From positions 18,013,088 to 18,077,087 of the forward strand of contig NC_057731.1 of NCBI RefSeq assembly GCF_004010195.1: a stretch of DNA of 64,000 nt, written 5' to 3'. The notes beneath the pieces are model-generated. The model saw nothing but the letters and a program-made list of their open reading frames with translations, searched no databases and had not been told where the DNA came from. Source of the stretch: Chiloscyllium plagiosum (taxonomy: Eukaryota). How positions within the stretch are numbered: the stretch's first letter is position 1; each line of letters opens with the position of its first letter. Both the position numbers and the translations under genes were made by a program. Positions 18,101 to 51,179 of this stretch are shown here, one piece after another.

Positions 18101-18221
18101 CACTCTTTCACTTCCTTCCTCTTATCCTGCATGTTCTTCATTTTCAAATATATCTCTTAATTTCTCTTGAATACGTTGACCCTGCCTGCACCACACTCTG
18201 AGGCAGTGGCCAACATCAGAG

Positions 18222-18550: not shown

Positions 18551-18866
18551 CATGATTTGGAGATGCCGGTGTTGGACTTGGGTGTACAAAGTTAACAATC
18601 ACACAACACCAGATTATAGTCCAACAGGTTTAATTGGAAGCACACTAGCTTTCGGAGCGACGCTCCTTCATCAGGTGATAGTGGAAGGCTCGATCGTAAC
18701 ACAGAATTTATAGCAAAACTTTACAGTGTGATGTAAATTTTTGCTATAAATTCTGTGTTACGATCAAGCCCTCCACTATCACCTGATGAAGGAGCGTTGC
18801 TCCGAAAGCTAGTGCTTCCAATTAAACCTGTTGGACTATAACGTGGTGTTGTGTGATTTTTAACTT
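18551..18866. mobile_element. fold-back PLE insertion (family C) with two opposed hammerhead motifs
   Basis: Inverted arms of about 135 bp around a centre near 18728; TSD TGCATAACTGA at 18540-18550 and 18867-18877. Confidence 0.9.
18783..18811 (+). ncRNA. minimal type I hammerhead ribozyme motif (mirror copy at 18646-18674, minus)
   Basis: CAC-CTGATGA-A-GGAGC GTT GCTCC-GAAAGCTA-GTG: core, 5-bp helix II, palindromic AGCT helix III, CUA triplet, 3-bp helix I. Confidence 0.8.
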
Positions 18867-19724
18867 TGCATAACTGAAGTTCCTTATCCCTGACGCCATT
18901 GTCATGAATGTTATCTGCATCATCAGTAAGGCCTTCATATCATTCATAGAGTCATAGAGATTTTACAACATGGAAAAGGCCCTTTAGCCCATCATTTCCA
19001 CTCTGGTCATTAAACATCCATTTATTTGAATCTCATTTTCAATCACTGGGCTGGAACCTTTTATGTTATAGCATTTTTCAGTGTTCATCTCATTAATGTA
19101 GTTCCCAGAACCGTTATATTTTATGCATGTTAAACACAACTTCCTTGCTTTTATAATATGTGTTGCTAATGATAAAGCCCAGGATAATGTATACTTTATT
19201 AACCGTACTCTCAATCTGTTCTGCCACCTTCATTGATTTATACACATATACATCCAGGTTCCTCAGCTCCTGTACTTCCTTTAGGATTGTATATTTTGTT
19301 TCATATTGTCTCTTTGCATTGTTCCCACCAAAATGAAGAAATCACTCCACACTCCCCAGCCTCTACATTATGGGTTTATAAGCAATTCATCACCAGCTAC
19401 TTGAGGGCATTTAAAGATGGGCAATAAATATTAACTTAGGTAGTGATGCCCAAATCCCATGAATGAATGTGAAAAAACCCTCTGCCTTATCAATTGTAAA
19501 CCCCTCAATTGTCTAAAGAATCTCCATCTTCACCATAATCTGTGTCGTACCTTTTGTCTTGGTGAAGGCAGATGCAAGCTATTCAATTAGTTGTCTCAGC
19601 CATGCTTTTGGCCCCATATATAAAATTTCCTTTTCAAGCCTAATCAGCGTCACTCCCTTCATTTTTTTATAGAAGACTTTAAAGTGCCCTTTATGTTAAC
19701 TGCCAGTTTATTCTCATATTCTCA

Positions 19725-20130
19725 TAGATTCGTAGAGTCATAGAGATGTATAGCATGGAAACAGACCCCTCGGTCCAACCCATCCATGCCGACCAGATAT
19801 CCCAACCCGATCTAGTCCCACCTGCCAGCACCCGGCCCATATCCCTCCAAACTCTTTCTATTCATATACCCATCCAAATGCCACTTAAATGTTGCAATTG
19901 TACCAGCCTCCACCACTTCCTCTGGCACCTCATTCCATACACGTACCACTCTCTGTATGAAAAAGTTGACCCTTAGGTCTCTTTTATATCTTTCCCCTCT
20001 TACCTTAACCCTATGCCCTCTAGTTGTGGACTCCCTGTTGTAATCTGAGGTAACCCTCTTCGCTGTCCACTACACCTCCAACTTTGGTGTCATCTACAAA
20101 CTTACTAACTGTATCTCTTATACTTGCATC
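19725..20130 (-). mobile_element. young CR1 3' end within an older minus-strand CR1 (about 19480-21200)
   Basis: TAGAGTCATAGAGATGTATAGCATGGAAACAGACCC terminus; flanks show decayed CR1 endonuclease-region similarity. Confidence 0.8.
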
Positions 20131-20799
20131 CAAATCGTTTATTCTCTTTTTATTCTGTTACCTGCCTTTTCAATCTTCTTGGAATTTTGTAATCAGGCTG
20201 GCTATTGGTTGTTTTCTCCACCTGACATCTGTCCGACGTTTACTTTTTCATATTCATCTTCAGCTTAATTTTAATCTAAAGGTGTGGTTCTTTGTTCGCC
20301 CAACCTGTTCCCTCCATGGGTGTTTACCTTGACTGTGCCCAAACAATCTCTTCAGCGACAGTTTTGATTCCATTTTATCCGGATCAGATTCATACAGCAT
20401 TGAAATTGGCTAACGCACTTATTATTGCACCAGATTGTTCCTTGCCAATTTTTATCTTAAACCTTATTATAAAATTATCACCATTTTCAAAATGTTCCTG
20501 TACTGATATGTGTGACAACTTGACATACCTGATTCACAAGGGCAAAGTCTGGCAATGCCTCTTCTCCCATTGGACTGGGAACTTACTGCCGTTGAAAACA
20601 CCTCTCAGCACACGCTGGGAACTCTTGATTGTTGTTTACACTATTATCCAAGTCTATATTTAGATAGTTAAAGTCCCCTATTATAAATATTCCATATCGT
20701 GCACATCTCTGTGATTTCCTTGCTAGTTTGTTCTACTTCTTTCCCACTATTTGGTAACCTAAAGACCTCACTGACCAATGTAGTTGCTCCTTTTTTGTT

Positions 20800-21045
20800 A
20801 AAAAATAAAAGCAAATTGCAGCGGATGCTGGAATCTGAAACCAAAAAAGAAAATGGTGGAAAATCCCAGCAGGTCTGGCAGCATCTGAAAGGAGAGAAAA
20901 GAGCTGACGTTTCAAGTCTAACTGACCCTTTGTCAAAAAAAACTTTTTTTTTGACAAAGGGTCAGTTAGACTCGAAACGTGAGCTCTTTTCTCTCCTTAC
21001 AGATGCTGCCAGACCTGCTGAGATTTTCCAGCATTTTCTCTTTTG
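20800..21045. mobile_element. fold-back PLE insertion (family B variant) with U3-A8 hammerhead cores
   Basis: Inverted arms of about 100 bp centred on an A-run/C/T-run at 20943; TSD GCTCCTTTTTTGTT at 20786-20799 and 21046-21059. Confidence 0.9.
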
Positions 21046-21221
21046 GCTCCTTTTTTGTTGTTGCATACTTCTGGATCCTGAGCTTGGATGCTCTGGGAAA
21101 TCTGCTGTCTCCTTTTGTTCTCTGAAGCAACAATTTCTCCATTTTTCTTTCCTTCCCCATCTTCCCTGAAAACTTTATACTCCAGGAATATTTATTGCAC
21201 AATCCTGAAACTTGTTGGGAT

Positions 21222-21895
21222 TATAGAGTCATACAGCATAGAAAGAGACCCTTCCATCCAACTCATCCACACCAACCAGACATCCCAATCCGATCTGGAC
21301 TCATTTGCCAGTATTTGGCCCATATCCCTCTAAATCCTTCCTATTCATGTACCCGTCCAGGTGCCTTTTAAATTATACCAGTCTCCACCACTTCCCCTTG
21401 CAGGTTATTCCGAACATGCACCACCCTCTGTGGGAAAAGTTATCCCTCAGGTGGCTTTTGTAAATCTTACCCCTCTCACTGTAAACCTATGTGGTCTAGT
21501 TTTGCACTTCCCCAGCCTAGAAAAAAGGCCATTCACCTTGTCTATGATCCTCATGTTTTTATAAACTGCTAAGGATCACCCCTTAGCCTCTAACACTCCA
21601 AGGGATAAATAGCCCCAGCTTATTCAGCCTCTCCTTAGAGCTCAAACCCTCCAGATCCGGCAATATTCTTGTGAATCTTTTCTGCACCCTCTCAAGTTTA
21701 ACAACACCCTTTGTAGAGAAAGGTGACCAGAATTTGTGTACGCAATATTATAAAAACGGCCTCACAAATGTCATGTACAACCACAAAATGGCATCCTAAC
21801 TCCTATTTTCAATATTCTTTCCAATGAAGGCATTCATACCAAATGCCTTCTTCACCACCCTGTGTCTACCTGTGACTCCACTTTCAAGGAACTAC
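21222..21895 (-). mobile_element. CR1 LINE 3' portion
   Basis: ATAGAGTCATACAGCAT terminus; the minus strand matches CR1 ORF2 C-terminal sequence (LKVESQVD). Confidence 0.8.
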
Positions 21896-22656
21896 TAGAT
21901 GAAAAGGCTTGAGAGGAGGCCAGTATGGAGTGTAAATGTTTATATAGATGCATTGTGTCAAAACAAACTGTTTCTTTAAAGGTGTTGAAATTTTGTAACT
22001 TAATAAATTTATCAAAAGTCAAACATACATGTTCAAAAATGCAAATTGGAATGTCTAGTGACAAATTCATTCAACAGTCAGTCTAAATAATTTAATTTCA
22101 ACATCATGGAAAGATAGAGAAGCAGTTTTATGTGATATTATTGATTTTGTCTCTCTCTTGATAATGCTTTTCATATCGGTGTCATAGTTTGAAACATCAA
22201 AGTCTCTAGCATTTTATTATATAATGATGCCACAATTGTGACATAGCTCATGGAGAAAGCAGGCAGCACAGCTTGCTAATCTTCAGTGTATCGTTGATAT
22301 TGCTCATGCTTTATGAGACAACAGAATCAGATTCATCACAAGTAATATTACTCACATCAGTTTCTCACATCAGTTGAAACATCTGAACTGTGTCCTTTAG
22401 GATGAAAGGTAGAACACTTCCTTTTAGTTTTAAGATAAGAGTTGTGTTTCATAGTTGTTTCAACGATCAGTTATCGATACACACAAAGTCATTACTGAGC
22501 ACAAAAACTCCTGGATCCAAATAGTGAACTCAATGTTTCTCCATTTGTTGTTTTTGGAGAAGAATGTAACACTATTTCATTCACAAAGATTGTCTGAGTT
22601 AAAATTATATAACTGAATTACTTGCAGCTCTTACTTTTGACCTTTTTGTATTACAG

Positions 22657-22756
22657 AGGTAAAGAGATTGGCCATGATGTGGACTTTTTGATAAGCTGCC
22701 CAGAAAACTTGGATGAAAACTTTCTTTGTAAGATAATCAATAAGCTGGACATTCAG
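22657..22756 (+). CDS. DNTT: DNTT/TdT internal coding exon (equivalent to human exon 8)
   Basis: Pyrimidine tract and ttacag acceptor, CAG|gtagat donor. After one phase nucleotide it translates GKEIGHDVDFLISCPENLDENFLCKIINKLDIQ, containing the Pol X catalytic GHDVD motif. Joins the next exon in phase 0. Too short for the ORF track. Confidence 0.96.
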
Positions 22757-24647
22757 GTAGATATCAACGCTGCTAAATTACAGTGACTTAGCAATAAGCA
22801 ACTTAATTTATGTTATCCTCTGTATGTCATTTATTTTATGCTAATAGCAACATCTAATGGAAAAACAAGAACCGCCACAAGTTAAAAATTAGCCAAAAAT
22901 CAGCCAATGCATCAGGAACATTTGCTCACTAGATTCAAGACAGAGCAGATTTATAATTGCAATTATATAAAGAATAAAAGTTAATTAGTTTTGAGATTCA
23001 ACCTTGGAATCTAATTAGAAAAGGAAAGAATTATATTAGCTCTGATTTTAACTCCAGGCTGGTTCTGGGTCAGTGGTGAGTAACATGACTTCAATAAAGA
23101 TTTTACCTTCTGGTACAGAAAACAGACTTGAGCATTTTACCTCCTAGGCTTTTTCTATGTGCAGTTTCCCCACTCAATTCACAGGGAAATAAATTGAATG
23201 TCATCATGGCACAGTCAAAGGTCGAAAAAATGTGAAAAGATCTTGGGCCACAACATCATTACACAATGTGGACATCAACATTGCACCAGCTTTGCTGAAG
23301 CTACTGAAGACATGCCTTAGAAATGTAGTAGGATTGGTAAAAATACTTTGCAAGTTAAGCGTGGTAAGTGCAATCTAATGCCCTGTGTCAAGGTGTGTTG
23401 GTAGAGGGGAAGCATTGTGATTGACTGGGAGATCCCAGTGCCTTCATCCTGTTAAGTCAGGGTCAGGGAGACTTTCAGACTACCTTCCCACTCAGTGGTA
23501 CACCACCTTAAGTGCTTTGTTTAACTAGTGATGGTAGAGGGCTCATTGTCCAAGGAGGCTAGCCAACAAACCCTGTTTAGTTATCTCGTGGCCTTTTAGG
23601 GTCATGTGTTTGCTTGTGGGATTTGACATCAGAAAGGGGAAGTCCATGGGATGCCACCCTCTTTGTCCTTAATGTTGACACCCTTCTGTCCTCACTGGCA
23701 CAGCCACCACCTTTCAATACCTGTCCTGCCCATATTCACTTCAATCTCATTACTGATCCTTTGCATTGGAAATACGAAATAATGAAATATCAACAGTTCC
23801 CCACACTCATGGTGCTGCATAACTGCCAGTATCTCCTTAAACATAGAAATGGGAGCAAGGGGAGGCCATTTGGCCCTTTCACCCTGCTCTGCAATTCAAT
23901 ATGATCATGGTTAATCGCCTAACTCAGTACCCTGTTCCTGCTTTCTCCCCATACCATTTAAATCCATTTAACCTTTAATGTAGTAAAATAAAGGAATGGG
24001 TGAATGTACCCTAATCAGTTTGTAGTAACCCTTTTTAACTTAAGTTTGTTGCACAGTGAGATAGGGAGCAAGAGTCAGGGAAAGGTCCAACACAACTTTA
24101 TTGAACATTTTATCAAGATAAAACAATATTTATGAGACTGTACTGTTGTACTTTAATTAAATGCTACCAAACTCGATCAATCTCTTCATGGGGCTCCTCA
24201 AGAAACAGTCTTAAATCTCTAAGTAAACAGTCTCAAATCTGCATTAGCTATCTAATTCTGACATACGTTTCCAAGGATTTACTATACCCTATCCACAGGT
24301 GCCTACCACTGTATTTGAGCTGTTTGTCTAAAAGGACTGCTAATACTCATTCAATAAGGCTGGGACAAGGTTGAGCGATGTTTCAGGATCTGCAGTTGTT
24401 GATTTAGACCTCCCCTCTCCTCAAGGGCTGATTGTGGTCACAACATGTTGGCCTCTCCATTGAAGAAGGTGCAAAAAACAAAAGCTGCCCCTTTATCCTC
24501 TCAAAGAAACTATGGCCCATGTCCAATACTAGCATTGAGTGGGGCAGCTAGACCCAATGAGGTAACTACTTTAATATTTGGAGGTTGCAGAACATGGTTT
24601 TGATCCTTCAACTGTTGAGTACTGTCCTTGCCACACTATTCCTCTGG

Positions 24648-24858
24648 GAGAAAGTGAGGACTGCAGATGCTGGAGATCAGAGCTGAAAATGTGTTGCTGG
24701 AAAAGCGCAGCAGGTCAGGCAGCATCCAAGGAACAGGAGAATCGACGTTTCGGACATAAGCCCTTCCTCATTCCTGAAGAAGGGCTTGTGCCCGAAACGT
24801 CGATTCTCCTGTTCCTTGGATGCTGCCTGACCTGCGCTTTTCCAGCAACACATTTTCA
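24648..24858. mobile_element. fold-back PLE insertion (family A)
   Basis: Inverted arms of about 87 bp centred near 24770; TSD ACACTATTCCTCTGG at 24633-24647 and 24859-24873. Confidence 0.9.
24774..24801 (+). ncRNA. minimal hammerhead ribozyme motif
   Basis: CTGAAGA-A-GGGC TTGT GCCC-GAAACGTC; palindromic ACGT, GUC triplet; helix I is weak. Confidence 0.72.
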
Positions 24859-26099
24859 ACACTATTCCTCTGGCCTTCCTACTGAGCTGGGTGCCACCAG
24901 GTCTGTGTAGCATTCTTCTAACAGCGCAGGTTGACTGGATGTGGAAATACAGCTTGTTCTGAAACAATGTGGCTGTTAGCTCCTGGTCAGGCTGATTGGG
25001 CCTGCCTGGTTTCCATGGGAGTTGATTGTTCAAGGCTTAGCTGCATGAACACTCTGTTCCAACTCTGCAGCTTGCAAATAAGTTGAAACTTGGCTTCCAC
25101 ATTTTGAGTTCTTTTATCCATGCTCACGACACAGTATCAATATTTCTTTAACAATCCTGGAGATCATGGGTCACCTGACCATAGTAAGAACTTTAGATAT
25201 TTTCATACCAGCCTGTCTAGACATGTAAGTACACACATCCAGAGCAGGTGGAACTTCAATCTGAGACTCCTCGCTCAAAGGTCGAGACGTTACCACAACA
25301 CCACAAGAGCAATGCCCTAACAACTAAAATTAATCATATTTAATGAGCAGCAGGTCATACTGAGTGGAGATTTTCACCTTGCCAGGGCCTGAATTCAATG
25401 GGAGGACTAATGTTACCGTCCAGGTGAATATTTGTTACCTTGGATTGTCCTGGGCCACCCCTGGAAAGAGAAAAATCCCACTGGATTTTTCACTGGTTTA
25501 AGGCTACAATCACCAGCCCTATTATCTGCTCTGATCACTTAATGACAGATTCCACACAATTCTGGGGCTAAATTCATTAACTCTGAAAACGGGTGTCAGG
25601 AGCACAATGAGAAGTTCACCTTAAAATGATGTTAGCAATGAAGGAGGTAAACCAGTTTTGTGTAGTTTTCTGCTGATTTGAATGATTTCAGTGTCTAGTC
25701 AATGTAAGCCACAACACCACAAGTTGAATGGCTGAACATATCATCTGTGGCCTGTGAAATTGGTGAACATGACAATATCCACTTTACCAATGGTCAGGCA
25801 TCAGTCAGACACGAATGGTGTGGAAATTTCCCCTGCACAGCTGAGCTGGACCTCCTCTGGTGCCTTGATGATAACTGCAAGCCACATACCGTCCTAACTT
25901 TGAGATATATTGCCATTCCTTTAGTATTGTTGGGTCAAATTCCCGGAACTCCCTCCACATGGTCTCGTAGTTTAACTTGCACCAAGTGGACTACAGTGGT
26001 TCAAAGGGGCAGCTCACCACCACTTTCTCAACTCGGGGTCGATAATAAATCCTGGCCCAACCAGCGAGGCCCATCCATTGAAGGAATAAAAAGTAACAG

Positions 26100-29000
26100 G
26101 TGATGTCTCTTTATAACAGCCTGACAAGAGCCAATAATAAAAAGCTTAAAGCAGTGGAGAATTTACAGCCATGTCTTAGCTGCAATACATTGGAGTAGAA
26201 TGGAGGGTTAGAATAGACTAACAGTAATAGTGAGGGTAGGCAACGGGGATTCGGAACCGTGTTGCAATGGAAGTGTGTCTGATGGGTGTTGTTTATCGCC
26301 AGTCATCTTGAATGTGTCTGCAGAAGCATTTGTGCGGAGAGGCGCGCCACGTGTACAAGGCCTGCCCAAGACGAGGGGCCACCACCTACGCACAGTTGGC
26401 CGGAGGTGGCAATGCGAGCCATGGACTGCAAAAGGCCAGCAAGGTACCACAAACCAGCAGGGGAACAGTGTCTGGGGGCACCCAGAAGGATGGATTGGAG
26501 CAGACGGCAGCCAAGGGGGGACGAGCAGCAGCCAATCCAAGCTCCCACAGGACAGACGGAGGAAATGGAGGAGGAGAAAACCGAGGAGGCAGAGGAGTGG
26601 ATTCCTGTAAAAACCAGGAAGAGGAAACCTCGCCAGGCCCCCAAAGCCACCCAGCAAAGGGGGAAACTACACCTGCATGAGATGGATACAGGCAGCTCTT
26701 CAGATGGTGAGGACGGGCATAAGGAGGGTCGTCACCAGAGGAAGAGACAGAGTGCAGCGGCGCCTCCTCGTCGCTGATGTCACGTTCAGAAACACTCCCC
26801 TGAGACTGATTAATGTGTACGCCCCAGTGGGTAAGAGTAAACGGTTGGCCGTCCTGCAGCAGCTTCCACTGTTGCTGGCTACGTTCAGGCCGGTCATTCT
26901 GGCCGGAGACTTCAACTGTATCATTGATGCAGATGGACGATCGGCGGGGTGGACAGTAAACTGGACACCACGTTCAGAGCAATGATGGAAATGGTAAAAG
27001 ATGCCAAGCTGTACGATGTCTTCATACAGACAGAGCACAGCGTAGATACACCTGGTCACGGGCAGACAGGTCTATCCGCTCAAGGAAAGATGACCTGTTT
27101 GTGTCCTAAACGTTCTCGGTCAGATCCACTGACATCAAGCCGGTGTTCTTCTCTGACCACTGACTCCTGCTGGCCGACTGTCACCAACAGGATGAGCAGC
27201 AGGCTGGTAAGGGAACGTGGAAGCTGAACACCAAGCTGTTGACCCCGGGAAACATTGAGGAGCTCAAGAGGGACTACGCAGGTTGGAGAACTGTGAAGCC
27301 CCTCTTTGAGTCCCCAGCTGACTGGTGGGAAACAGTAAAAGGGAACATCAAGAGGTTCTTCATCCTCAAAGGTGTTAGGAGGTGAGAGAGAGGCGGAGAA
27401 AACTGTCCCAGCTCCAGGAAAGTATGCAGAACTTGCTCCTGCTGCAGACAATGGGGGTTGATGTCACAGAGGACCTCCAGGAGGTGAAGGGCCAGCAAGC
27501 CTCGCTCTTTGCCTCAGAGGCCTCCAAGATAATCGTCTGGTCCAGGGTCCGCTCAGTGGAGCAGGACAAGACGTGCTCACGTTTCTTCTTCCAGAAGGTG
27601 CACTGCACAAAGAGAGCTCCGTGCTCAGCAGCCTGAAGGAAGAAGATGGCTCAGTAACATCATCTCAGGCTTACGTCATGAGGATCAGCAAATCCTTCTA
27701 TGCCAGTCTGTATGACTCGAAGCCAACCGACAGCGCGGCCTCCCAGTCATTCCTGTCCTCTATCACGGAGGTCTTAGACAACAGAACAAGGGAGAGGCTG
27801 GACCAGCCACTATCTCTGGACGAGCTGACCAAGCTGACAAGTCCTTCGAAAAGAATAAAACTCCCAGAAGCGATGGCTTACCGGTCAAGCTCTATTCTGC
27901 TCTGTGGGACTTGATTGGCCAGGACCTGCTGGAGGTATATGTCAGTATGCTTCGGGCAGGTACCATGACTGAATCCATGAGGAAAGGCATCATCACCCTC
28001 ATCTACAAGCGGAAGGGGTAGAGGCAGGAAATCAGAAATTGGAGACCAATCTCACTATTGAATGCGGATTCCAAAATCTTGGCAAAGGTAATCGCCAACT
28101 GGGTCAGGTCTGCTCTGGGGTCGGTGATTCACCCTGACCAAACCTGTGCTGTACCAGGCAGGAAGATCGCTGAGAGTCTCGCACTCCTCAGGGATACGAT
28201 CGCCTACGTGCAGGACAGGGGGCTGGACACCTGCCTCATCAGCCCACGACCAAGAGAAAGCCTTTGACAGGATATCACATACATATACGAGAGATGTTCT
28301 CTCCCAAATGGGCTTTGGGGAGGGAATCTGCAATTGGATCAGACTGCTCTACACCAGCATTGTCAGTGCAGTCTCAATCAATGGGTGGGAATCAGATAGC
28401 TTCCCAGTCAGATCTGGAGTCAGGCAGGGCTGCCCTCTCTCTCCTGCCTTGTTTGTGTGCTGCATAGAGCCATTTGCCGAGTCCATCAGGAAGGATGTAA
28501 GCCTGAGAGAGGTGACTATTCCTGGCAGCAGGGGCCTGCAAGTTAAGGCCTCCCTGTACATTGATGATGTCGCCGTTTTCTGCTCGGATTCGCTGTCCGT
28601 GCACAGACTAATGTGCATATGTGACCAGTTCGAACGGGCCTCGGGGGCCAAGGTAAACTGAGGCAAGAGCGAGGCCATGCTCTTCGGGAACTGGGCCGAC
28701 CAATCCTCGATCCCCTTCACCGTCAGGACCGACCACCTGAAGGTGCTGGGTATTTGATTCGGGGGGGCTGGGGCGTGCACCAAGTCTTGGGGGGAGCGTA
28801 TCAAGAAAGTGAGGCAAAAACTGGGCAGATGGAAGCTACGGTTGCTGTCCATCGCGGGAAAAAAACCTGGTCATCAGGTGTGAGGCATTGTCAGTGTTGT
28901 TATGTGTGGCACAGATCCGGCCTATTCCCAGAACCTGTGCCATCACAGTCACCTGGGCCATCTTCCATTTTATATGGAGATCAAAGATGGCCAGGGTCTG

Positions 29001-30900: not shown

Positions 30901-31248
30901 TTACATTTGGTAACAAGTCCTGTTGTGACAGATTGGCAACTGTTTCCCTGCAAAATTACAGCATCTTTGAGTGCTATATCTCAAAAGTATCCAAGACACA
31001 AACTCTCACCCTATAACCAATGTGGGTACATAAGTAAGATAAGTTGTGAACAGTTCCCTTTAGCTGCAGCCTTTTATGAGACCCACTTGTTTCAAGCCCC
31101 AGGTATTGAGACTACATCTTCATCCGTCCAAATGAATGAAGCCACAAAGGCGCACATATTAAATAATGAATGTTTAGGGTGGAAATGTAAGGATATGATC
31201 AGAAAGTAGCAAAGAAGCTCAAGACAGTCTTAGAAATGCATTAATCAC

Positions 31249-31526
31249 TGCTGTGGTTCTGTTCGCCGAGCTGGGAATTTGTGTTGCAGACGTTTCGTCC
31301 CCTGTCTAGGTGACATCCTCAGTGCTTGGGAGCCTCCTGTGAAGCGCTTCTGTGATGTTTCCTCCGGCATTTATAGGAAACATCATAGAAGCGCTTCACA
31401 GGAGGCTCCCAAGCACTGAGGATGTCACCTAGACAGGGGACGAAACGTCTGCGACACAAATTTCCAGCTTGGCGAACAGAACCACAACAACGAGCACCCG
31501 AGCTACAAATCTTCTCACAAACTTTG
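31249..31526. mobile_element. fold-back PLE insertion (family D) with two intact opposed hammerhead motifs
   Basis: Inverted arms of about 115 bp; TSD AATGCATTAATCAC at 31235-31248 and 31527-31540. Confidence 0.9.
31416..31449 (+). ncRNA. minimal hammerhead ribozyme motif (mirror copy at 31289-31322, minus)
   Basis: GCA-CTGAGGA-T-GTCACCT AGAC AGGGGAC-GAAACGTC-TGC: core, helix II with one mismatch, ACGT palindrome, GUC triplet, 3-bp helix I. Confidence 0.8.
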
Positions 31527-33050
31527 AATGCATTAATCACAATGGCTCACAGATCCAAATGGGCTTCAGATTAAAGTCACATCAAATTTGTGAAACTAAT
31601 TCCATTGCTTTTCACTGAGGAAATTTATTACTGACCAGTTCCATCATAAAAGTCAGAGTCAATGGGTTTCCCACAGGGATCGAGCATTAGGCCAATTTTA
31701 CACCATTTCACTTATCTTGTTCTTGCTGGTAGATTGGTTTCAAACTGTGACCATAGATTATGAAAACAAAGGAAGTTCATTTATAACCATTACGTTCCCC
31801 ACAGCCCCTGAGGATAATAGGGGTGCTTTCTTATTAGAGAGAGATGACTGGTGGTGGTTCAACCTGAGGGTCACCACACCTCAGGCAAGGTTGAGGAAGT
31901 GCATCTTCATGGTGACCTCAGCCAATACAGGAACTGAATCTGTGCTGATGGCATCGCTCTGCATCGCCGACCAGCTATCTTCAGATTAAATCTCAAAGCA
32001 TCACGTTATTTGTCCTTTTTAAGGATATACATTTTATGAATAGCATGTAGGTTTTTTTCTTTCCATTTTTCATTTTCTTTTGTGTTGTTCATGGTCATTC
32101 TGGCTGAGTACATTCCAGACCATTGTTGTTTGTGTACAAAAGTTAAAGAACATAAGAATTGTAGATTATCAAGTTTATAACACATAGGGAATTCAACTGA
32201 CCCATTATTCCTCTGTATGTGCTGGATCATCAACAGGATTTATCTATCATAGCAATTTGTAGCACCTCATTATAGAAAAACATCCTAAAGTGAAGTTCCA
32301 AAGAAGAGTAATTATTTCAAAATATTAATTTTACTTCTGTATCCACAGATGCTGTCAAACCTGCTGAGTTTCTCTAACATATCCTGTTTTTATTATCCAA
32401 AAGTATTTTGCAGGTTTTGAAAAATTAGGTTCTAATTATTATGCTCTAATTGTAACTCAGCATTCTTTCACCAAACTCGAAAGGTGTTAATCACTTGGAC
32501 AGCATTCATGGTTGTATTGAAAATTATTTTAGCTTTAATTTTAAGGAATTTTATGTTCTCCATGCAATTCACTCATGGGTTTTCATATTTGATTATAAAG
32601 TTACTACAAATAGATTCAGATTAAGTGAGGTGAAACAGTCTATTTTATTCGTATTGCATCTGACCTGCAGAAATCTCACCATTATACTATTTGCTCAAAC
32701 TGCATTGCTGTGAAAAACAATGTCTTTTTGCAGTCAGCTCAGAGTGTGACAGTCCTCTGGAGGCCTGGAAACCAATGATAAAGTGAAGGAGGCACAGGTT
32801 GACTGTTTGCATCATAACCTTGTCATAAGAACTAACATCTTGAAAGGATTTAGCATTAGCAATTAGGATGGCTTGATACTGTTGCTCTGGCCTTCGATAT
32901 GGAAGATGAGATTTGTCACGAGGGATGTTTTTACAAAACCATTTTTTCATTTCACTGTTTTGTCAAATAACATCATGTGAGCTGTCACAAGTATGGAGGA
33001 AAAAAATGAGTTTCACTGGCTTGACAACTGCTGTAAAAATGTTGAACTGA

Positions 33051-33500
<450 letters not shown>

Positions 33501-37575: not shown

Positions 37576-37696
37576 AGAGAAAGTGAGGGCTGCAGATCAG
37601 AGCTGAAAATGTGTTGCTGGAAAAGCGCAGCAGGTCAGCAGCATCCAAGGAACAAGAGAATCGACGTTTCGGGCATAAGCCCTTCTTCAGGAATTA
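37576..37696 (-). mobile_element. solo family A pLTR insertion with intact hammerhead at 37663-37690
   Basis: Minus strand reads AATTC-CTGAAGA-A-GGGC TTAT GCCC-GAAACGTC; TSD TGGTTTTATGTTAG at 37562-37575 and 37697-37710. Confidence 0.88.
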
Positions 37697-39129: not shown

Positions 39130-40320
39130 CAGGTGAGGTGCTGGAAGACTGGAGGTTGGCAAATATGGTGCCATTGTTTAAGAAGGGTGGTAAAGACAAG
39201 CCAGTGAACTATAGACCGGTGAGCCTGATCTCGGTGGTGGGCAAGTTGTTGGAGGGAATCCTGAGGGTCAGAATGTACATGTATTTGGAAAGGCAAGGAC
39301 TGATTCGGGANNNNNNNNNNNNNNNNNNNNNNNNNNNNNNNNNNNNNNNNNNNNNNNNNNNNNNNNNNNNNNNNNNNNNNNNNNNNNNNNNNNNNNNNNN
39401 NNNNNNNNNNNNNNNNNNNNNNNNNNNNNNNNNNNNNNNNNNNNNNNNNNNNNNNNNNNNNNNNNNNNNNNNNNNNNNNNNNNNNNNNNNNNNNNNNNNN
39501 NNNNNNNNNNNNNNNNNNNNNNNNNNNNNNNNNNNNNNNNNNNNNNNNNNNNNNNNNNNNNNNNNNNNNNNNNNNNNNNNNNNNNNNNNNNNNNNNNNNN
39601 NNNNNNNNNNNNNNNNNNNNNNNNNNNNNNNNNNNNNNNNNNNNNNNNNNNNNNNNNNNNNNNNNNNNNNNNNNNNNNNNNNNNNNNNNNNNNNNNNNNN
39701 NNNNNNNNNNNNNNNNNNNNNNNNNNNNNNNNNNNNNNNNNNNNNNNNNNNNNNNNNNNNNNNNNNNNNNNNNNNNNNNNNNNNNNNNNNNNNNNNNNNN
39801 NNNNNNNNNNNNNNNNNNNNNNNNNNNNNNNNNNNNNNNNNNNNNNNNNNNNNNNNNNNNNNNNNNNNNNNNNNNNNNNNNNNNNNNNNNNNNNNNNNNN
39901 NNNNNNNNNNNNNNNNNNNNNNNNNNNNNNNNNNNNNNNNNNNNNNNNNNNNNNNNNNNNNNNNNNNNNNNNNNNNNNNNNNNNNNNNNNNNNNNNNNNN
40001 NNNNNNNNNNNNNNNNNNNNNNNNNNNNNNNNNNNNNNNNNNNNNNNNNNNNNNNNNNNNNNNNNNNNNNNNNNNNNNNNNNNNNNNNNNNNNNNNNNNN
40101 NNNNNNNNNNNNNNNNNNNNNNNNNNNNNNNNNNNNNNNNNNNNNNNNNNCTGGTACAATGCAACATTTAAGAGGCATTTGGATGGGTATATGAATAGGA
40201 AGGGTTTGGAGGGATATGTGCCGGATGCTGGCAGGTGGGTTGGGATATCTGGTCGGCATGGACGGGTTGGACCGAAAGGTCTGTTTCCATGCTGTACATC
40301 TCCATGACTCTATGACTCTA
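39130..40320 (+). mobile_element. young CR1 LINE spanning the assembly gap
   Basis: EDWRLANMVPLFKKGGKDKPVNYRPVSL before the gap; FKRHLDGYMNRKGLEGY and an ATGACTCT-repeat tail after it. Confidence 0.88.
39311..40150. other. assembly gap (840 N)
   Basis: Run of n. Confidence 1.
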
Positions 40321-44540: not shown

Positions 44541-44569
44541 GATTTTACAAAGTCAATGAAGAGAGTCTG

Positions 44570-47060
44570 GAATTAATTTTGATCAGCAATATGCATCGCT
44601 TGCCATGTGGAATTATGATGTTGTGGTGATAACGAAGACCTAGCTGAAGGAAAGGCAGGACTGTATGTTAAATATTCCTGGTTACAGGGTGTTCAAAAAA
44701 TCTAGGAAAGGCAGAAAGGGAAGTGGGGTGGCAGTATTGATCAACATAGCTTTGCAGGATTAGAGAAAGAGGATGGCTCCGAAGTTTCAGGGACAGAACC
44801 AATTGAGCTAGAGGTAAAGAATAAGGACAGTGCAATCACCTTGCCTTGTGTGAGCTGAAGGCACCAATTAGCAGGAAGAGCAAGTAAAGGAACAAATCTG
44901 CAAAGTAAGTATTGAAAGGTGCCAGCATTGCTGAGTAGTTATAATGGTGCAATTTTATTACCCAAATGTAGTTTGATTTGTAGTACTGTAAAGGGCAGAG
45001 AGGGGCAAACATTCTTAAATTGTGTTCAGAAGAATTTACTTTTGCAGATTGGTGTCCAGTCCAACAAGAAAGGCAATACTGATTAACCTGATCCTTGGGA
45101 GCACGGTGGTCAGGTAGAGCAAGAGTCAAGGAGGCAGTAATTGTTGGGCCAGAGGAATTAGGATGATGGGGCAAGAATAACATGGGCTGCATAGAATGGA
45201 GCAAAGGTTAGTAAGAAAGATTACAGCTGATCAATGGGCTACGTTTAAAGAAACAATGGATCAGATGAAGTTAAGATATATTCCTTCAAGAGGGTAAGGT
45301 AGGAAAAACAACTTGACAGCACGGTGGCTCAATGGTTAGCTCTGCTGCCTCACAGTACCAGAGACCTGGGTTTGATTCCAGCCTTGGGTGACTGTGTGAA
45401 GTTTGCATGTTTTCCCCGGATCTGCATAGGTTTCTGCCTGGTGCACTGGTTTCCTCCCACAGTCCAAACATAGCTGGATTGGCCATGCTAATTTCCCCAT
45501 AGGGTCCAAGGATGTGCAGGCTAGTAGCCATGAGAAATGTGAGGTTATGGATCTATGGTCACTGGCTAGGTCTGGGTGGGGTGCTCTTTAGAGGGTTGGT
45601 GTGGACTTGATGGGCCAATTGGCCTCTTTCCACATTGTAGGGATGCTATGATTGATTCTATAAAATCCAGAGTGTCCTATTGAAACAGAAGGAATAAACT
45701 AAGATAAAGGAGAGAATGTATGTTTATTAGAGGTGTCAGGTAGAAAATACAACTGAGAACTGAGCCAAATATAAAATGTTCAGAAAGGAAGTAAAAAAAT
45801 AAATAAAACAAGCAATGAGGGATTATAAACAAAAGACTGACAGCAAAGATAAAGGGGAATCCCAAAGCCTTTGTTACCATGTCAACAGTAAAAATGTGGC
45901 AAGAGAAGGAGTAGGGCTGATGAGGGATCTAAAAGGGGATTTCTGTATTGAGGTAAGGGGCATGGCTGAGGTCTTAAACAAATATCCTGCAGGTGTCTTT
46001 ACCAAGGAGCATTCCTTACCTGGGCTATAGTGACAAAGGAGGAAACTCAGTCACTTGGTAGGGTTTGATATTTATAAGAGGTGGTATTACGTTGTTGGTA
46101 TTTCGAGATGACAAGACCCCTGAACCAGACGAAGTACCTCCACATATGTTAAAGGAAGTGAGGGTTGAAATTGCAGAGACATTATTCTTAATCTTTCAGT
46201 CTTTTCTGGACATGTGGGTGGTACCAGAGTACTGGAAAATTAAAAACATTGCAGCCTTATTCAAAAGGATTGTAGGGAAAAACCCAGCAATTACCTACTA
46301 GTCAGTTTAAACTCAGCTTCGAGGAACAATAATCCAGGTTAGAATTAATAGTCACGTGGACAAATATTAATTAGAGAGAGCCAACATAGCTTTTTTCAGG
46401 GAAAGTCTTGTCTAACAAATATGCTGGATTTCTTTGAAAACATAACAGAGAGAGTTGATGATGGTAATGCAGTTGATGTGATGTACATAGGCTTCGAAAA
46501 GGTAATTGGCAGTGCTCCACAACAGACTTGTGATAAAGCTTACAGCTCATGGAATAAAAGGAACAGTTACAACTTGGATGCAAATTTGCTGAGTGATAGG
46601 AAGCAACAATCATTAATTACTATTTTTCTGGCTGAAGGTAGGTTTGTACTGGACATTCCTGGGAAATGTTGAGACCTTTTGTTTTCCCTGATTCATAGAA
46701 ATGATCTACATCTTGGTATGCAAGAGGCAATTTCCAGGTTGTGGATGATACAAAATTTGGAAGCATTGTAAACTGTGAGGAGGGCTTCCAAAATATATTG
46801 ATAAATTGGTGGGCGCATGGATAATCAACAGGTGGAATTCAATGTGTAGAAATGTGAAGCAATATATTTTTGTAGGAAAAACATGGGAGAGACAGTATAA
46901 AATGAAAGGTATTCCTGTAAAGATTGTGCAGGGGCCGAGCAGTCATAATGCACGAAAGGTAGGAGAACAGATGGGGAGCTCAATACAAAAGAGATTTACA
47001 AGAAAGGTTCCAGGGATGAGAAAGTTCCTTAGAAAGATAAATTGGAGCAGTTGGTACTAT
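44570..47060 (+). mobile_element. degenerate CR1 LINE with a SINE inserted at about 45315-45660
   Basis: Decayed APE and RT peptides (MLDFFENITERVDDGNAVDVMY, VDDTK); SINE A/B boxes near 45320-45380. Confidence 0.8.
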
Positions 47061-48574: not shown

Positions 48575-50200
48575 AAGACCAAAAGATGTAGGATCAGAAT
48601 TAAGTGATTCGGCCCATTGAGTCTCCTCTATCATTCAATCATGGCTCTTGTATGCCTCAAACCCATTCTCCTGCCCTCTCTCTTTAAACCTTGATGGTCC
48701 TTACTAATCAAGAACTTGTCCATCTCTGTTTTAAATACATTTGATGACTTGGCCTCTATAGCCTTCTCTAGCAATGAGTTCTACAACTTCACCACTCTCT
48801 GTCTGAAGAAATTCCTCTTCATCTCAGTTCTAAAGAGTTTTCCCTTCACTCAGAGGCTGTTGTCTTGGGTCCTAGTCTTTCCTACTGGTGGAAATGTCTT
48901 CCCCATGTACATTTTATCCAGGCCTCTCAGTTTCAACCAGATTCTCCCTTAACCTTCTAAACTCCATTGGATACAGAAACAGAGTCCTCAACTGCTCTTC
49001 ATACGACAAGCTCTTCATCCTGGGGATCATTCTTGTAAACCTCCTCTGGACTCCCTCCAAGGCCAGCACATATTTCCTGAGATACGAGGTTCAAAACTAC
49101 TTACAATATTTCAAATACAATCTTTCAGAGCCTTATATAGCCTCAGCAGTACATCTTTGCTCTTGTATTCTACCCCTCTTGAAATGAATGCTAACATTGC
49201 ATTTGCCTTCCTAATTGACAACTGAACCTGCATGTTAGCCTTAGGAGTCCTTGATCAAGATTCTCTTAAGTGCCTTTGTGCTTCAGATTTTCAAAGCCTT
49301 TCCCCATTTAGAAAATAGTCTGTGCTTCTACTCTTCCCACCAAAGTGCATAGCCTCACATTATCCCACACTGTATTGTACTTCTTTCCTCCCTCTCCTAG
49401 CCTGTCCAAGTCCTTCCGCAGCCTTCCCGTTTCCTTAACACTTCCTGTCCCTCCTCCTATCTTTGTATCATCTACAAACTTAGCAAAAATGCCCTTAGTT
49501 CTTTCATCTAGGTCATTAATGTATAACGTGAATGGTTTTGGTCCCAACACTGACACCTGCAGAACTCCATTAGTCTCCAACTGCCATTTTGAAAAAGAGC
49601 ACTTTTATCCCCATTCCCTGCTCCCTCCAGTTTATCCATCCAGTACCTTGTCCTTAAACCCATGGGTTCTAATCTTATTTAACAGCCTCCTGTGTGGCAC
49701 CTTGCCAAAGGCCTTTGGGAAATCCAAATAGATTACATTCACTGCCTCTCTTTTGGATAATTTATCTGTTATCTTTTCAATAAGATTCTAGCAGATTTGT
49801 TAGGCATGACAAAGCCATGCTGACTCAGCCCTATTTCACCATGCACTTCCAAGTATCAGCTATCTCACTCTTAATTATGGATTCTACAATCTTACAATCA
49901 CCAAGGCCAGGCTAACTAGCCTATAATTTCCTGTCTTCTGCTTCCCTCCCTTCTTAAACAAGGGTACTGCATTCACTATTTTCCAGTCCTCTGGAGCCCT
50001 CTCTGACTCTAGTGATTACTGAAAGATCATCACCAGTGCCTCTACAACCTTCTTAGCTACCTCCTTCAGAGCTGTGGGGTGCAGTCCATCCAGTCTGGGT
50101 GATTTGTCCACCTTCAGACCTTTCAGTTTTCCTAGCATCTTCTACTTAGTGGCAGTCATCACACTCAGCTCTGCCCTCTGATACTTTTGAGTCTGAGATG
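48575..50200 (-). mobile_element. CR1 LINE fragment
   Basis: Minus ORF NGVLQVSVLGPKPFTLYINDLDE...KFVDDTKIGG. Confidence 0.88.
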
Positions 50201-50976
50201 TACTTCTGTCAGACTTTATATGCTTCATGTTCCACTGTACTGAGAATGCATCAGCAGAATTAAATAGGCAACATTCAATAAAGGCTTACCAAGTGATAAA
50301 CCATGAAGACATTGTACAGAATTTTACCAGTCCCTGTTGGCAGGGATGGGATGCCAAAATCCCCTTGATGAATTTCCCATTACCCTCACACTAGCCCCAA
50401 TCTGTTTGTAATGTCATTTGCCCTCACCCCAATTGAGGCCTGTAATTGGGCAATTAATGACCACTTAAGGGCCACACCTTACCTGATTAGTTAGTTTGGG
50501 AGGAGTTCAGGAGGAGGGTAGATGGCCAAAGGGTTGCCTTGTCAAGACTTGTGCTGTCAGGGTGGGGCCCATCTCCTTCAGTGGGTTTCTTTCCCAAAAG
50601 GTCAGTCTCTCACATCCCCTCCCAGCCTACTGACCTTTCCATGAAGACCCATCTCACTGTGCCTCACCTCTCTAACCAGTTAAGAATCCTTGAATTATTA
50701 CATGTCTTTATTAAAGTGGGGAGATATTACTGACTCAGGTGGAGGGACACAAAAGTCCTGTCTTCTAAAAAATCTTCACCCAGATTTTCCACATCAAATG
50801 CACAGTTGATGTTAACATTAGATTTCTACCTCTTGTGGTTAATCAGTTATGAACTTTTTGACTGAAGCAAATATTTGTCAAGTAATTCCTTGGAACTGCT
50901 CCCACTCCACTGGTGTCACATGTAGTCAGGAATTCTAATGTATCAATGGCAAGGCAACATGTGCAAAGCAAAAGCA

Positions 50977-51179
50977 GGATTGGAGTGGTGCTGGAAAAAC
51001 ACAGCAGGTCAGGCAGCATCCGAGGAGCAGGAACATCGACGTTTTGGGCAAAAGGATGAAGGGCTTTTGCCCAAAATACTGATTTTCCTGCTCCTCAGAT
51101 GCTGCCTGACCTGCTGTGCTTTTCCAACACCACTGTAATCTTGACTCTAATCTCCAGCATCTGCAGTACCCACTTTTGC
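50977..51179. mobile_element. fold-back PLE insertion (family A subfamily), folded inside the hammerhead
   Basis: Inverted arms joined at GGGCAAAAG|GATGAAGGGC; TSD AGCAAAAGCA at 50967-50976 and 51183-51192 (extends to 13 bp with one mismatch). Confidence 0.85.

What the first reader, a model, noticed from the sequence alone, without database searches (positions are those of the whole stretch)
18551..51179. Hammerhead-bearing fold-back retro-insertions from four PLE families share one geometry with a roughly 37-nt single-arm overhang
Seen: five short TSD-flanked palindromic insertions (18551-18866, 20800-21045, 24648-24858, 31249-31526, 50977-51179) belong to four distinct sequence families. 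In each, two pLTR copies diverge from the centre with 3' ends outward, the fold point lies in or within about 55 nt upstream of a CUGANGA...GAAA hammerhead core, and one arm is longer: 18551-18588 (36-38 nt), 20800-20840 (about 41), 24648-24683 (36), 31490-31526 (37), 51141-51179 (about 38). TSDs are 10-15 bp. Established: Penelope-like elements carry minimal hammerheads, often show inverted termini, and have a short 3' tail extension, so the parts are not new. Inference: the constant overhang across unrelated sequences suggests a length-measuring step, with the two target-DNA ends primed at two fixed registers on the RNA. These are retro-products that mimic MITEs, and some may be mobile units in their own right.
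Basis: partly seen in the sequence, partly recalled or inferred. Interest (0 to 1): 0.8.

Follow-up and report, generated by a model that had tools for sequence, protein, structure and literature searches.

The report
Head-to-head Penelope insertions with tails
Five short palindromic repeats in this animal genome are truncated, head-to-head double copies of Penelope-like retrotransposon ends, and their one-sided 36-42-base overhang is the already described "tail" of such elements, so the finding is real but largely known.

Summary
They have exact 10-15 bp target-site duplications (TSDs), 3' ends pointing outward, and one arm 36-42 nt longer. Hammerhead cores lie 0-54 nt from the fold point. 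One core is a U3-A8 variant and one is decayed. Rfam finds none of them.

A contig from a related species lacks the 211-bp element at 24648-24858 plus one TSD copy. That palindrome, overhang included, is therefore a single insertion.

The overhang is not measured anew at each event. It is each family's own 3' tail. Fifteen related 3' ends in the window fall into two registers, 8 long and 7 short.

This geometry is in print: head-to-head inverted pseudo-LTRs (pLTRs), a 30-40 bp tail on one end only, and variable TSDs (Arkhipova 2013; Craig 2021).

The families are not all unrelated: three of the five elements share their 3' region. Independent mobility of the palindromes is not supported.

What remains suggestive is that all 5 fold-backs pair one long with one short end, and that arm 5' ends cluster at the hammerhead.

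First-reader notes on other windows of this genome describe the same architecture. Those notes are unchecked.

The parts
18551..18866 (.). ins1 (family F1): head-to-head fold-back. Tail 18551-18588 (sense on -), arms 18589-18725 (-) and 18732-18866 (+). TSD copies at 18540-18550 and 18867-18877.
   Evidence: hammerhead cores at 18650-18674 (-) and 18783-18807 (+)
20800..21045 (.). ins2 (family F2): head-to-head fold-back. Tail 20800-20841 (sense on -), arms 20842-20942 (-) and 20945-21045 (+). TSD copies at 20786-20799 and 21046-21059.
   Evidence: U3-A8 variant cores at 20910-20936 (-) and 20951-20977 (+); right junction also present in a contig of related organism B (X5 record 17)
24648..24858 (.). 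ins3 (family F3): head-to-head fold-back. Tail 24648-24683 (sense on -), arms 24684-24770 (-) and 24775-24858 (+). TSD copies at 24633-24647 and 24859-24873.
   Evidence: core at 24774-24797 (+); empty site in organism B (X5 record 23 joins 24632 directly to 24859); both junctions in organism A contigs with 0 differences (X1 records 7, 8)
31249..31526 (.). ins4 (family F4): head-to-head fold-back. Arms 31249-31363 (-) and 31375-31489 (+), tail 31490-31526 (+). TSD copies at 31235-31248 and 31527-31540.
   Evidence: cores at 31293-31322 (-) and 31416-31445 (+), with one mismatch in helix II
50977..51182 (.). ins5 (family F3, older): head-to-head fold-back. Arms 50977-51054 (-) and 51064-51140 (+), tail 51141-51182 (+). 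TSD copies at 50967-50976 and 51183-51192.
   Evidence: core decayed (read by eye); tail motif at 51151-51166
37576..37696 (-). Single-arm F3 copy with tail and a 14-bp TSD. Its 5' end lies about 5 nt upstream of the hammerhead core.
   Evidence: core at 37667-37690 (-)
1..172 (+). Single-arm F3 copy with tail. It runs on upstream of the hammerhead and off the window start.
   Evidence: core at 46-69; the AUG inside the core opens a frame closed after 17 codons
36285..36406 (+). Single-arm F3 copy with tail. The sequence runs on upstream of the core.
18200..18313 (-). Single-arm F2-like copy with tail (ends approximate, no TSD found).
55812..55915 (-). Single-arm F2-like copy with tail (ends approximate).
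6311..6404 (-). Single-arm F1 copy that ends at the short register, with no tail (ends approximate).
1542..1640 (+). Single-arm F2-like copy that ends at the short register (ends approximate).
8240..8316 (+). Single-arm F2-like copy that ends at the short register (ends approximate).
32318..32392 (+). Single-arm F2-like copy that ends at the short register (ends approximate).
1123..1211 (-). Single-arm copy of a further subfamily, with a canonical CUGAUGA core whose helix II resembles that of ins2. It ends at the short register (ends approximate).

Best explanation
Each palindrome is the product of one integration event of a Penelope-like element (PLE) machinery acting on the 3' part of a pseudo-LTR (pLTR) RNA.

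Proposed steps:
1. The endonuclease makes a staggered cut, which later gives the 10-15 bp TSD.
2. Both target 3'-OH ends prime reverse transcription on pLTR RNA.
3. Synthesis starts at one of two fixed internal registers about 36-42 nt apart. One strand uses the distal register, giving the arm with the tail. The other uses the proximal register, giving the arm without it.
4. Both antisense cDNAs run towards the hammerhead region. They are joined head-to-head close to the template's 5' end, by a template jump or a few bases of microhomology.
5. Fill-in completes the palindrome.

The overhang is the family's own 3' tail, which is the known 30-40 bp PLE tail.

Shown here: a single insertion event with a TSD; outward 3' ends; two discrete registers shared by fold-backs and single-arm copies; hammerhead cores of the PLE minimal type.

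Inferred from the literature (Frangieh 2024): priming of both strands, and the registers being RT start sites.

Inferred only: how the two cDNAs are joined. Within this explanation I put about 0.55 on dual-strand priming and about 0.25 on a snap-back route (see rivals).
For: One event: a contig of related organism B is contiguous from 24632 to 24859, so it lacks the 211-bp element plus one 15-bp TSD copy (X5 record 23). Organism A contigs hold both junctions with 0 differences (X1 records 7, 8).

Exact TSDs of 11, 14, 15, 14 and 10 bp, plus 14 bp for the single copy at 37576-37696.

Two registers: in an alignment of 15 related 3' ends, 8 continue through a conserved tail and 7 lose similarity within about four columns at the end of a T run. 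Fold-back arms and single arms share the same two positions.

At the short end of ins2, contigs of other copies in three runs continue into the tail sequence. At places 21039 and 21044 this involves 1,051-1,839 contigs per run.

PLE-type hammerheads: 8 C3-G8 cores against 0.48 expected, all with the 1-nt bulge before helix II, followed by GAAA and a short palindrome. Two more U3-A8 cores are in ins2. The bulge, the dimer-type helix III, the U3-A8 variant and pairs of minimal hammerheads on opposite strands are described for PLEs in Cervera & de la Pena 2014 (passages).

Published geometry:
[quoted passage not shown] Published mechanism: the anole PLE protein cleaves and extends both strands, RT starts at two adjacent internal sites, and the tail is the sequence between them (Frangieh 2024, main text part 1 and passages).

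Layout resembles the anole element. In the F3 copy at 1-172 the AUG lies inside the CUGAUGA box, the predicted cut is 25 nt after it, and the registers are at about +85 and +121 (by hand). In the anole element the cut is 26 bp after the ORF start and RT starts 111-118 bp into the ORF.

Flanks of other copies at the long terminus are AT-rich: 27 of 30 consensus letters are A or T, with agreement 0.34 over 32,752 reads. This fits the reported AT-rich target preference.
Against: - No RT or GIY-YIG coding sequence is linked to these copies in the window. The only RT is a LINE remnant. PLE membership therefore rests on structural hallmarks.
- Rfam does not call the hammerheads.
- For F1 and F4 the window holds no second long copy, so I have not shown that their overhangs are family sequence. 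That is only analogy.
- Frangieh et al. saw no difference in start site between top and bottom strands. That alone does not predict that all 5 of 5 fold-backs pair one long with one short end.
- Two independently primed cDNAs need not stop within 2-11 nt of each other, as the arms do here. This needs an extra assumption, such as a common RNA 5' end or a cDNA-to-cDNA jump.
- Ends of 9 of the 10 single-arm copies are judged only by loss of similarity. A TSD of 9 nt or more was found for 1 of 10.
Confidence: 0.8

Rival explanations
1. Single priming plus snap-back. Only one target strand primes, at the distal register. The cDNA runs to near the hammerhead, folds back on itself and is copied back outwards. 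Synthesis stops about 37 nt before the cDNA's start because that part is still held by the RNP. The end is then joined to the other target end.
For: - The arms meet with spacers of only 2-11 nt in 5 of 5 elements, as hairpin priming predicts.
- It also predicts that every fold-back has one long and one short end (5 of 5).
- Arkhipova 2013 read palindromes at inverted junctions as signs of self-priming (passage).
- In ins5 the 9-nt spacer is continuous with the tail-bearing arm, read by eye.
Against: - The short end of fold-backs coincides with the 3' end of single-arm copies that have no fold-back: 4 single arms in the alignment, plus the F1 copy. It therefore behaves as a start site on RNA, as shown in vitro.
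- In ins3 the 12-nt spacer is continuous with the arm that lacks the tail. A cDNA begun at the short register cannot template a tail by snap-back, unless a later deletion at the palindrome centre is assumed.
Confidence: 0.25
2. The palindromes are mobile units in their own right. A fold-back is transcribed and retro-copied as a whole, like a retro-MITE.
For: - Fold-backs are frequent: 5 against 10 single-arm copies in the window.
- First-reader notes on other windows report the same architecture. These notes are unchecked.
Against: - The two same-family fold-backs (ins3, ins5) have different fold junctions.
- At the ins3 fold point, 18,402 reads from other copies leave the sequence, partly continuing into upstream pLTR sequence.
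- By analogy with the anole element, the template RNA needs sequence 3' of the RT start sites (up to +172) that is not copied into insertions. Such copies would then be dead on arrival.
- A whole-palindrome copy would need its RNA 5' end exactly at the antisense tail end.
Confidence: 0.07
3. DNA-transposon MITEs with terminal inverted repeats.
For: They are short, palindromic, TSD-flanked and high in copy number.
Against: - TSD length varies from 10 to 15 bp.
- The two termini are not inverted copies of each other, because one carries a 36-42 nt extra tail.
- Single-arm copies with the same 3' ends and variable 5' ends exist.
- Hammerhead cores are oriented with 3' ends outward.
Confidence: 0.02
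4. Assembly or sequencing fold-back artefacts.
For: Palindromes can be created by chimeric long reads.
Against: - TSDs are exact.
- The arms have diverged by 4-14%.
- The ins3 junctions are in short-read contigs of organism A (X1 records 7, 8), and the ins2 right junction is in a contig of organism B (X5 record 17).
- The empty site in organism B matches the TSD exactly.
Confidence: 0.01

Closest known systems
Head-to-head inverted pLTR insertions of endonuclease-containing Penelope-like elements, with the 30-40 bp 'tail' (Arkhipova et al. 2013, PMC3846280; Craig et al. 2021, PMC8557442; passages read)
   Same: An inverted 5'-truncated copy joined head-to-head. The tail sits on one end only. 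The published example has a 31-bp tail and an inverted pLTR 37 bp shorter, against 36-42 nt here. TSDs are short and variable. Junctions are small palindromes.
   Different: Here there is no ORF between the repeats. The whole insertion is two pLTR 3' parts of 80-140 nt, 206-316 bp in all. TSDs are 10-15 bp against the 8-10 bp quoted for the rotifer. The families are very abundant: about 50,000x read depth against about 0-2.4x for single-copy sequence.
PAc (Poseidon of Anolis carolinensis): internal initiation of reverse transcription (Frangieh et al. 2024, PMC11167929; abstract, main text part 1 and passages)
   Same: Two discrete 3' registers with the tail between them. The AUG lies at the hammerhead, with the cut about 25-26 nt after it. 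The registers lie about 85-121 nt after the AUG (111-118 in PAc). Target flanks are AT-rich.
   Different: PAc was studied in vitro with an autonomous element. Here there are only genomic products of ORF-less copies. PAc showed no strand bias in start site, whereas here 5 of 5 double insertions pair one register of each kind.
Minimal hammerhead ribozymes of PLEs (Cervera & de la Pena 2014, PMC4209133; passages)
   Same: Type I layout. One bulged base before helix II. Helix III is reduced to a short palindrome, which is the dimer type. A U3-A8 covariant core occurs. Pairs of motifs lie on opposite strands about 100-700 bp apart.
   Different: The opposite-strand cores here are only 15-109 nt apart. 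Self-cleavage was not tested.
Twin priming of LINE-1 (5' inversions).
   Same: Both target strands prime cDNA in one integration event, giving inverted segments inside one TSD.
   Different: In L1 the second primer anneals internally, so the two segments are different parts of the RNA. Here both arms are the same 3' region, offset by a fixed ~37 nt.
Animal non-LTR retrozymes (Cervera & de la Pena 2020, PMC7229834, listing only; Li et al. 2026 preprint, 10.64898/2026.07.22.740005, abstract and passages)
   Same: ORF-less, hammerhead-bearing derivatives of PLE pLTRs. They are present in vertebrates, including one cartilaginous fish.
   Different: Retrozymes are defined by tandem direct repeats and circular RNAs. 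The elements here are inverted pairs or single copies with TSDs. The preprint's text does not mention tails or palindromes.
MITEs (DNA-transposon derivatives)
   Same: Size, palindromic look and copy number.
   Different: Here TSD length varies, the termini are asymmetric, and the 5' truncation is of the retro type.

Membership tests
Penelope-like elements (EN+ type), insertion products | pLTR copies in direct or inverted orientation, with an inverted 5'-truncated copy joined head-to-head | tested here: met
   5 of 5 elements: arms 86-96% complementary, spacers 2-11 nt, hammerhead cores oriented with 3' ends outward
Penelope-like elements (EN+ type), insertion products | 30-40 bp 'tail' extension, often on one end only | tested here: met
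In the F2/F3 families the overhang is homologous to the 3' tail of single-arm copies. Two values slightly exceed 40.
Penelope-like elements (EN+ type), insertion products | Short TSDs of variable length from target-primed insertion | tested here: met
   Exact TSDs of 11, 14, 15, 14 and 10 bp and 14 bp; empty site for ins3 in a related species
Penelope-like elements (EN+ type), insertion products | Minimal type I hammerhead in the pLTR | tested here: met
   Cores in ins1 (2), ins2 (2, U3-A8), ins3 (1) and ins4 (2); 8 C3-G8 cores in the window against 0.48 in shuffles. ins5 is decayed. No Rfam hit. Catalysis was not tested.
Penelope-like elements (EN+ type), insertion products | Autonomous partner encoding a telomerase-like RT with a GIY-YIG endonuclease | not testable with these tools
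   No such ORF in the window. The only RVT_1 hit belongs to a LINE with weak AP-endonuclease and zf-RVT hits. Frames from the AUG in the core close after 17 and 8 codons. First-reader notes report GIY-YIG-linked hammerhead termini elsewhere in this genome; unchecked.
Penelope-like elements (EN+ type), insertion products | AT-rich target preference | tested here: inconclusive
   The consensus of the flanks of other copies at the long terminus has 27 of 30 letters A or T, with agreement 0.34. The six TSDs in the window are 53-71% A+T, counted by hand, against about 60% for the window.
MITE (DNA transposon derivative) | Terminal inverted repeats reaching both ends, and a TSD of fixed length | tested here: not met
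   One end carries 36-42 nt with no partner. TSDs are 10-15 bp.
Non-LTR retrozyme | Tandem direct repeats, each with a type I hammerhead, giving circular RNA | tested here: not met
   The copies are inverted pairs or single. No tandem direct arrangement of these families appears in the window. RNA was not examined.

The most novel reading that the evidence does not exclude
In a double (fold-back) PLE integration the two registers may be used obligately once each, with both cDNAs copied to the same RNA 5' end, which lies at the 5' edge of the hammerhead. On this reading one short pLTR transcript, or a pair held in a dimeric RNP, is read from both target strands. The ~37-nt offset would then be the footprint of that complex, and the palindrome centre would record the template's 5' end. 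This goes beyond Frangieh 2024, who saw no strand preference for either start site.

Pointers:
- 5 of 5 fold-backs are heterotypic, while single arms are 5 long to 5 short (0.5^5 = 0.03).
- Spacers are only 2-11 nt.
- The 5' ends of five F3 arms lie within -12 to +13 nt of core position 3.
Probability: 0.25. Interest if true: 0.5.

Novelty: new member of a known kind. Interest (0 to 1): 0.25.

Why it matters
The finding gives natural, genomic products that mirror an in vitro result from 2024: two RT start registers and extension of both strands. They come from a distant vertebrate lineage and from families with different sequences. This supports the view that the tail and the head-to-head geometry are general consequences of PLE integration.

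In practice, such ORF-less fold-backs look like MITEs or miRNA hairpins. Rfam's E-value hits show this. They should be annotated as PLE fragments.

The possible rule of one register of each kind per event could be tested genome-wide. If it holds, it would constrain models of the integration complex.

Tried and rejected
1. Rfam. A gathering-threshold search and an E<=10 search of the whole window gave no hammerhead family. The motifs are too minimal for the models, so I used a descriptor with shuffle controls instead.

2. My own idea that the tail base-pairs with an upstream box, bracketing the short register.
- The longest perfect complementary runs are 9, 7, 7 and 9 nt at similar positions. 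They are reached by 31, 49, 61 and 5 of 2000 shuffles.
- In ins4's long arm the run is only 4 nt, reached by 1997 of 2000 shuffles.
- RNAduplex energies are no better than dinucleotide shuffles in 5 of 6 copies: 370, 126, 475, 79 and 137 of 1000 shuffles reach them, against 12 of 1000 for ins2.
- Minimum-free-energy folds show the stem in some copies only.
- I leave this as suggestive, not established.

3. TSD search for the ten single-arm copies. Only 1 of 10 has an exact repeat of 9 nt or more, so the other ends are approximate.

4. Search for an autonomous PLE in the window. 20 ORF pieces were scanned against Pfam. Only a LINE-type RT with weak AP-endonuclease and zf-RVT hits was found.

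5. Genome-wide ratio of short to long ends from the laid reads.
- The table lists only six loose-end rows for the raw-read run, and the short register is not among them.
- I can therefore only say that each short-register place has no more than the smallest listed row (8,184 reads), against 32,752 at the long terminus. This assumes the listing is ordered by read number.
- Whether the ins3 junction recurs elsewhere could not be counted from that output.

6. Literature.
- Searches for shark + Penelope + hammerhead and for Penelope-like + head-to-head / fold-back / hairpin / MITE found no paper on ORF-less PLE fold-backs as a class.
- The 2026 retrozyme preprint does not mention tails or palindromes.
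- Supplementary files were not opened. The supplementary figures of Frangieh 2024 (ends of genomic copies, RT start sites) and the motif lists of Cervera 2014 may bear on both the register and the hammerhead claims.

7. Considered and rejected: DNA-transposon MITEs and assembly artefacts (see rivals).

Full report
WHAT IS THERE

A scan of the whole window for inverted repeats with arms of at least 40 nt and at most 600 nt apart returns six pairs. There was therefore no selection of asymmetric cases within the window.

Anchored searches give exact target-site duplications (TSDs) of 11, 14, 15, 14 and 10 bp. Aligning each element with its own reverse complement leaves 38, 42, 36, 37 and 42 nt unpaired on one side and 0-1 nt on the other. 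The arms are 86-96% complementary, with spacers of 2-11 nt.

The assembly gap (39311-40150, all 840 N of the window) is more than 7.7 kb from any element and plays no part. I did not try to fill it.

HAMMERHEADS

Rfam reports no hammerhead at gathering scores or at E<=10. It reports only weak miRNA-family hits that sit on the palindromes and reflect the hairpins.

A descriptor of my own (CUGANGA, 0-1 bulged base, helix II of at least 4 pairs, GAAA) finds 8 cores, against a mean of 0.48 (maximum 3) in 100 dinucleotide shuffles. They lie in both arms of ins1, both arms of ins4 and one arm of ins3, plus three single copies. The other arm of ins3 ends inside the core. Both arms of ins2 carry UUGACAA in place of CUGANGA, with the same bulge, a 5-bp helix II and GAAAC. 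The other two hits of that variant descriptor look like AT-rich chance matches (4 hits against 0.83 expected). The ins5 core is decayed, read by eye.

All cores have one bulged base before helix II and are followed by GAAA and a short palindrome. These traits, the U3-A8 covariant core, and pairs of minimal hammerheads on opposite strands are described for PLEs by Cervera & de la Pena 2014 (passages). Cores are on the - strand in left arms and the + strand in right arms, so 3' ends point outward. The fold centres lie about 54, 7, 1, 47 and 0 nt from core position 3, computed by hand.

ONE INSERTION EVENT

I laid one raw-read run and one contig set of the same species label (organism A), and contig sets of two related organisms (B, C), on 20500-25200.

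A 1,940-nt contig of organism B is contiguous from 24632 to 24859. It lacks the 211-bp ins3 plus one copy of the 15-bp TSD (X5 record 23). That is a precise empty site. Contigs of organism A hold both junctions without a difference (X1 records 7, 8). The right junction of ins2 is present in a contig of organism B (X5 record 17, 5 differences in 226), so ins2 is older than ins3. Flanking single-copy sequence differs by about 2-3% between A and B (X5 records 18 and 23). The palindromes are therefore real, and each is a single insertion.

THE OVERHANG IS THE FAMILY'S TAIL, AND THERE ARE TWO REGISTERS

BLAST of the five elements against the window finds further copies, read.
- ins3 and ins5 are one family (75-82% identity).
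- ins2 shares a 19-nt box (9 matches in the window against 0.03 expected) and the tail motif (6 matches against 0.69) with them.
- ins1 and ins4 show no cross-hits.

'Four unrelated families' is therefore overstated. There are three unrelated groups.

In an alignment of 15 related 3' ends with their flanks, 8 continue through a conserved tail to a common terminus. The other 7 lose similarity within about four columns, at the end of a T run. The short arms of ins2, ins3 and ins5 end in the same zone as four single-arm copies, and the long arms end where five single-arm copies end. An F1 single copy at 6311-6404 ends at the short register of ins1.

At the short end of ins2, contigs of other copies in three runs continue with the tail sequence (1,051-1,839 contigs per run at places 21039 and 21044). 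At the long terminus of ins3, 32,752 reads of other copies run into unrelated, AT-rich flanks (consensus agreement 0.34, 27 of 30 letters A or T).

Read depth on ins3 is about 50,000x, against about 0-2.4x on single-copy bins, with 1.93 Gb read at 80% or more likeness. The family therefore has of the order of 10^4 copies. This is a rough figure.

For F1 and F4 the window offers no second long copy. That their overhang is family sequence is analogy, not shown.

COMPARISON WITH WHAT IS KNOWN

Craig et al. [quoted passage not shown]

Arkhipova et al. [quoted passage not shown] They also describe palindromes at inverted junctions, which they read as self-priming (passages).

Frangieh et al. 2024 purified the protein of an anole PLE (abstract, main text part 1 and passages). 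They showed that:
- it cleaves and extends both target strands;
- RT starts at two adjacent internal sites not homologous to the target;
- the tail corresponds to the sequence between these sites;
- the RNA needs the first 172 nt of the ORF, while RT starts at 111-118.

In the F3 copy at 1-172 the AUG lies inside the CUGAUGA box, the predicted cut is 25 nt after it, and the two registers are at about +85 and +121 (by hand). The anole values are a cut 26 bp after the ORF start and RT starts at 111-118.

The frames opened by that AUG close after 17 codons (F3) and 8 codons (F1), so these are ORF-less derivatives. No PLE-type ORF is in the window. The only RT is a LINE remnant at about 26.2-29.6 kb.

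The geometry is a known PLE hallmark.

MECHANISM AND ITS OPEN POINTS

I favour dual-strand target-primed reverse transcription at the two registers, followed by head-to-head joining of the two antisense cDNAs near the template's 5' end.

The main argument against a pure snap-back route is that the short end of fold-backs is the same position at which single-arm copies end. It therefore behaves as a start site on RNA. In ins3 the 12-nt spacer is also continuous with the arm that lacks the tail. A snap-back cannot produce that without a later deletion.

In favour of snap-back, or of a cDNA-to-cDNA jump, are the very small spacers in 5 of 5 elements.

Two observations go beyond the papers I read.
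- All 5 fold-backs pair one long with one short end, while single arms are 5 long to 5 short (0.5^5 = 0.03 under independence).
- The 5' ends of five F3 arms lie within -12 to +13 nt of core position 3, although two other F3 copies run on upstream. At the ins3 fold point, 18,402 reads of other copies diverge with a consensus agreement of 0.48. That lies between the value for random flanks (0.34) and for true repeat continuation (0.85-0.92), which suggests a mixture.

Both observations rest on small numbers.

MOBILITY OF THE PALINDROMES

I found nothing in favour. The two same-family fold-backs have different junctions. By analogy with the anole element, insertions lack the downstream RNA segment needed for priming. 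Recurrence of a junction elsewhere could not be counted from the output.

MY OWN SIDE IDEA

I tested whether the tail pairs with an upstream box. It gave mixed results and is not claimed.

EARLIER NOTES OF THIS SCAN

171 first-reader notes on this genome fit 'hammerhead penelope palindrome'. One describes 'inverted arm + fixed ~35-nt tail + 12-15 bp TSD' on another piece. Others mention GIY-YIG-linked hammerhead termini and a UUGANAA core. None has been followed up. I use them as leads only.

VERDICT

The feature is real and cleanly delimited, and the main inference is correct. It is a new set of members of a known kind, with low to moderate interest.

Noticed in passing
window 26200-29600 (+): A decayed non-LTR (LINE) element in a GC-rich stretch (0.53). 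It has weak Exo_endo_phos hits at 26677-26985, RVT_1 (E 1.1e-18) at 28146-28661 and zf-RVT at 29175-29501. There is no GIY-YIG, so it is not the partner of the fold-backs.
   Followed up: partly
window 21285-21441; also 19740-19890, 21223-21373, 40160-40320: A very high-copy repeat, about 16,000x in raw reads. It has sharp ends at 21317 and 21373 where other copies continue with a well-agreeing consensus (0.85-0.92). A direct copy lies 1.5 kb upstream, and inverted copies lie directly after the N gap.
   Followed up: no
window 1185-1211 (-) versus 20910-20936 / 20951-20977: A copy with a canonical CUGAUGA core has a helix II resembling that of ins2, which carries UUGACAA. This is a C3-G8 / U3-A8 covariation between related subfamilies in one window. 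The variant is known in PLE hammerheads.
   Followed up: partly
window 24647/24686 (joint table): A joint '24647 to 24686, opposite strands' is seen in 25, 23 and 12 contigs of three runs and in 3 raw reads. It may be tail-to-tail junctions elsewhere, in which a long terminus abuts an antisense arm that starts at the short register. The meaning of the row is uncertain.
   Followed up: no
window 24831: The CTG indel that distinguishes the two arms of ins3 is polymorphic in the family: 8,609 of 24,650 reads carry the extra CTG. It could mean two templates or slippage.
   Followed up: no
window 18665-18792, 20882-21004, 24720-24824, 50999-51118: Rfam E-value hits to unrelated miRNA families (mir-1791, MIR2118, mir-680, MIR171_1 and others) lie on the palindromes, all far below gathering scores. 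They are hairpin look-alikes.
   Followed up: yes
window 2791-2970, 4479-4773, 36804-37119, 45319-45498, 63187-63449: Another dispersed repeat family occurs in both orientations, possibly SINE-like. It is unrelated to the fold-backs.
   Followed up: no
window 21913-23796: The raw-read run shows depth 0 here, while contigs of three runs cover it. This is sampling or a filter, so no finding.
   Followed up: no
window 52141-52240 (+): A weak tail-motif match (3 mismatches) at 52208-52223 lies in what may be a very decayed further copy.
   Followed up: partly
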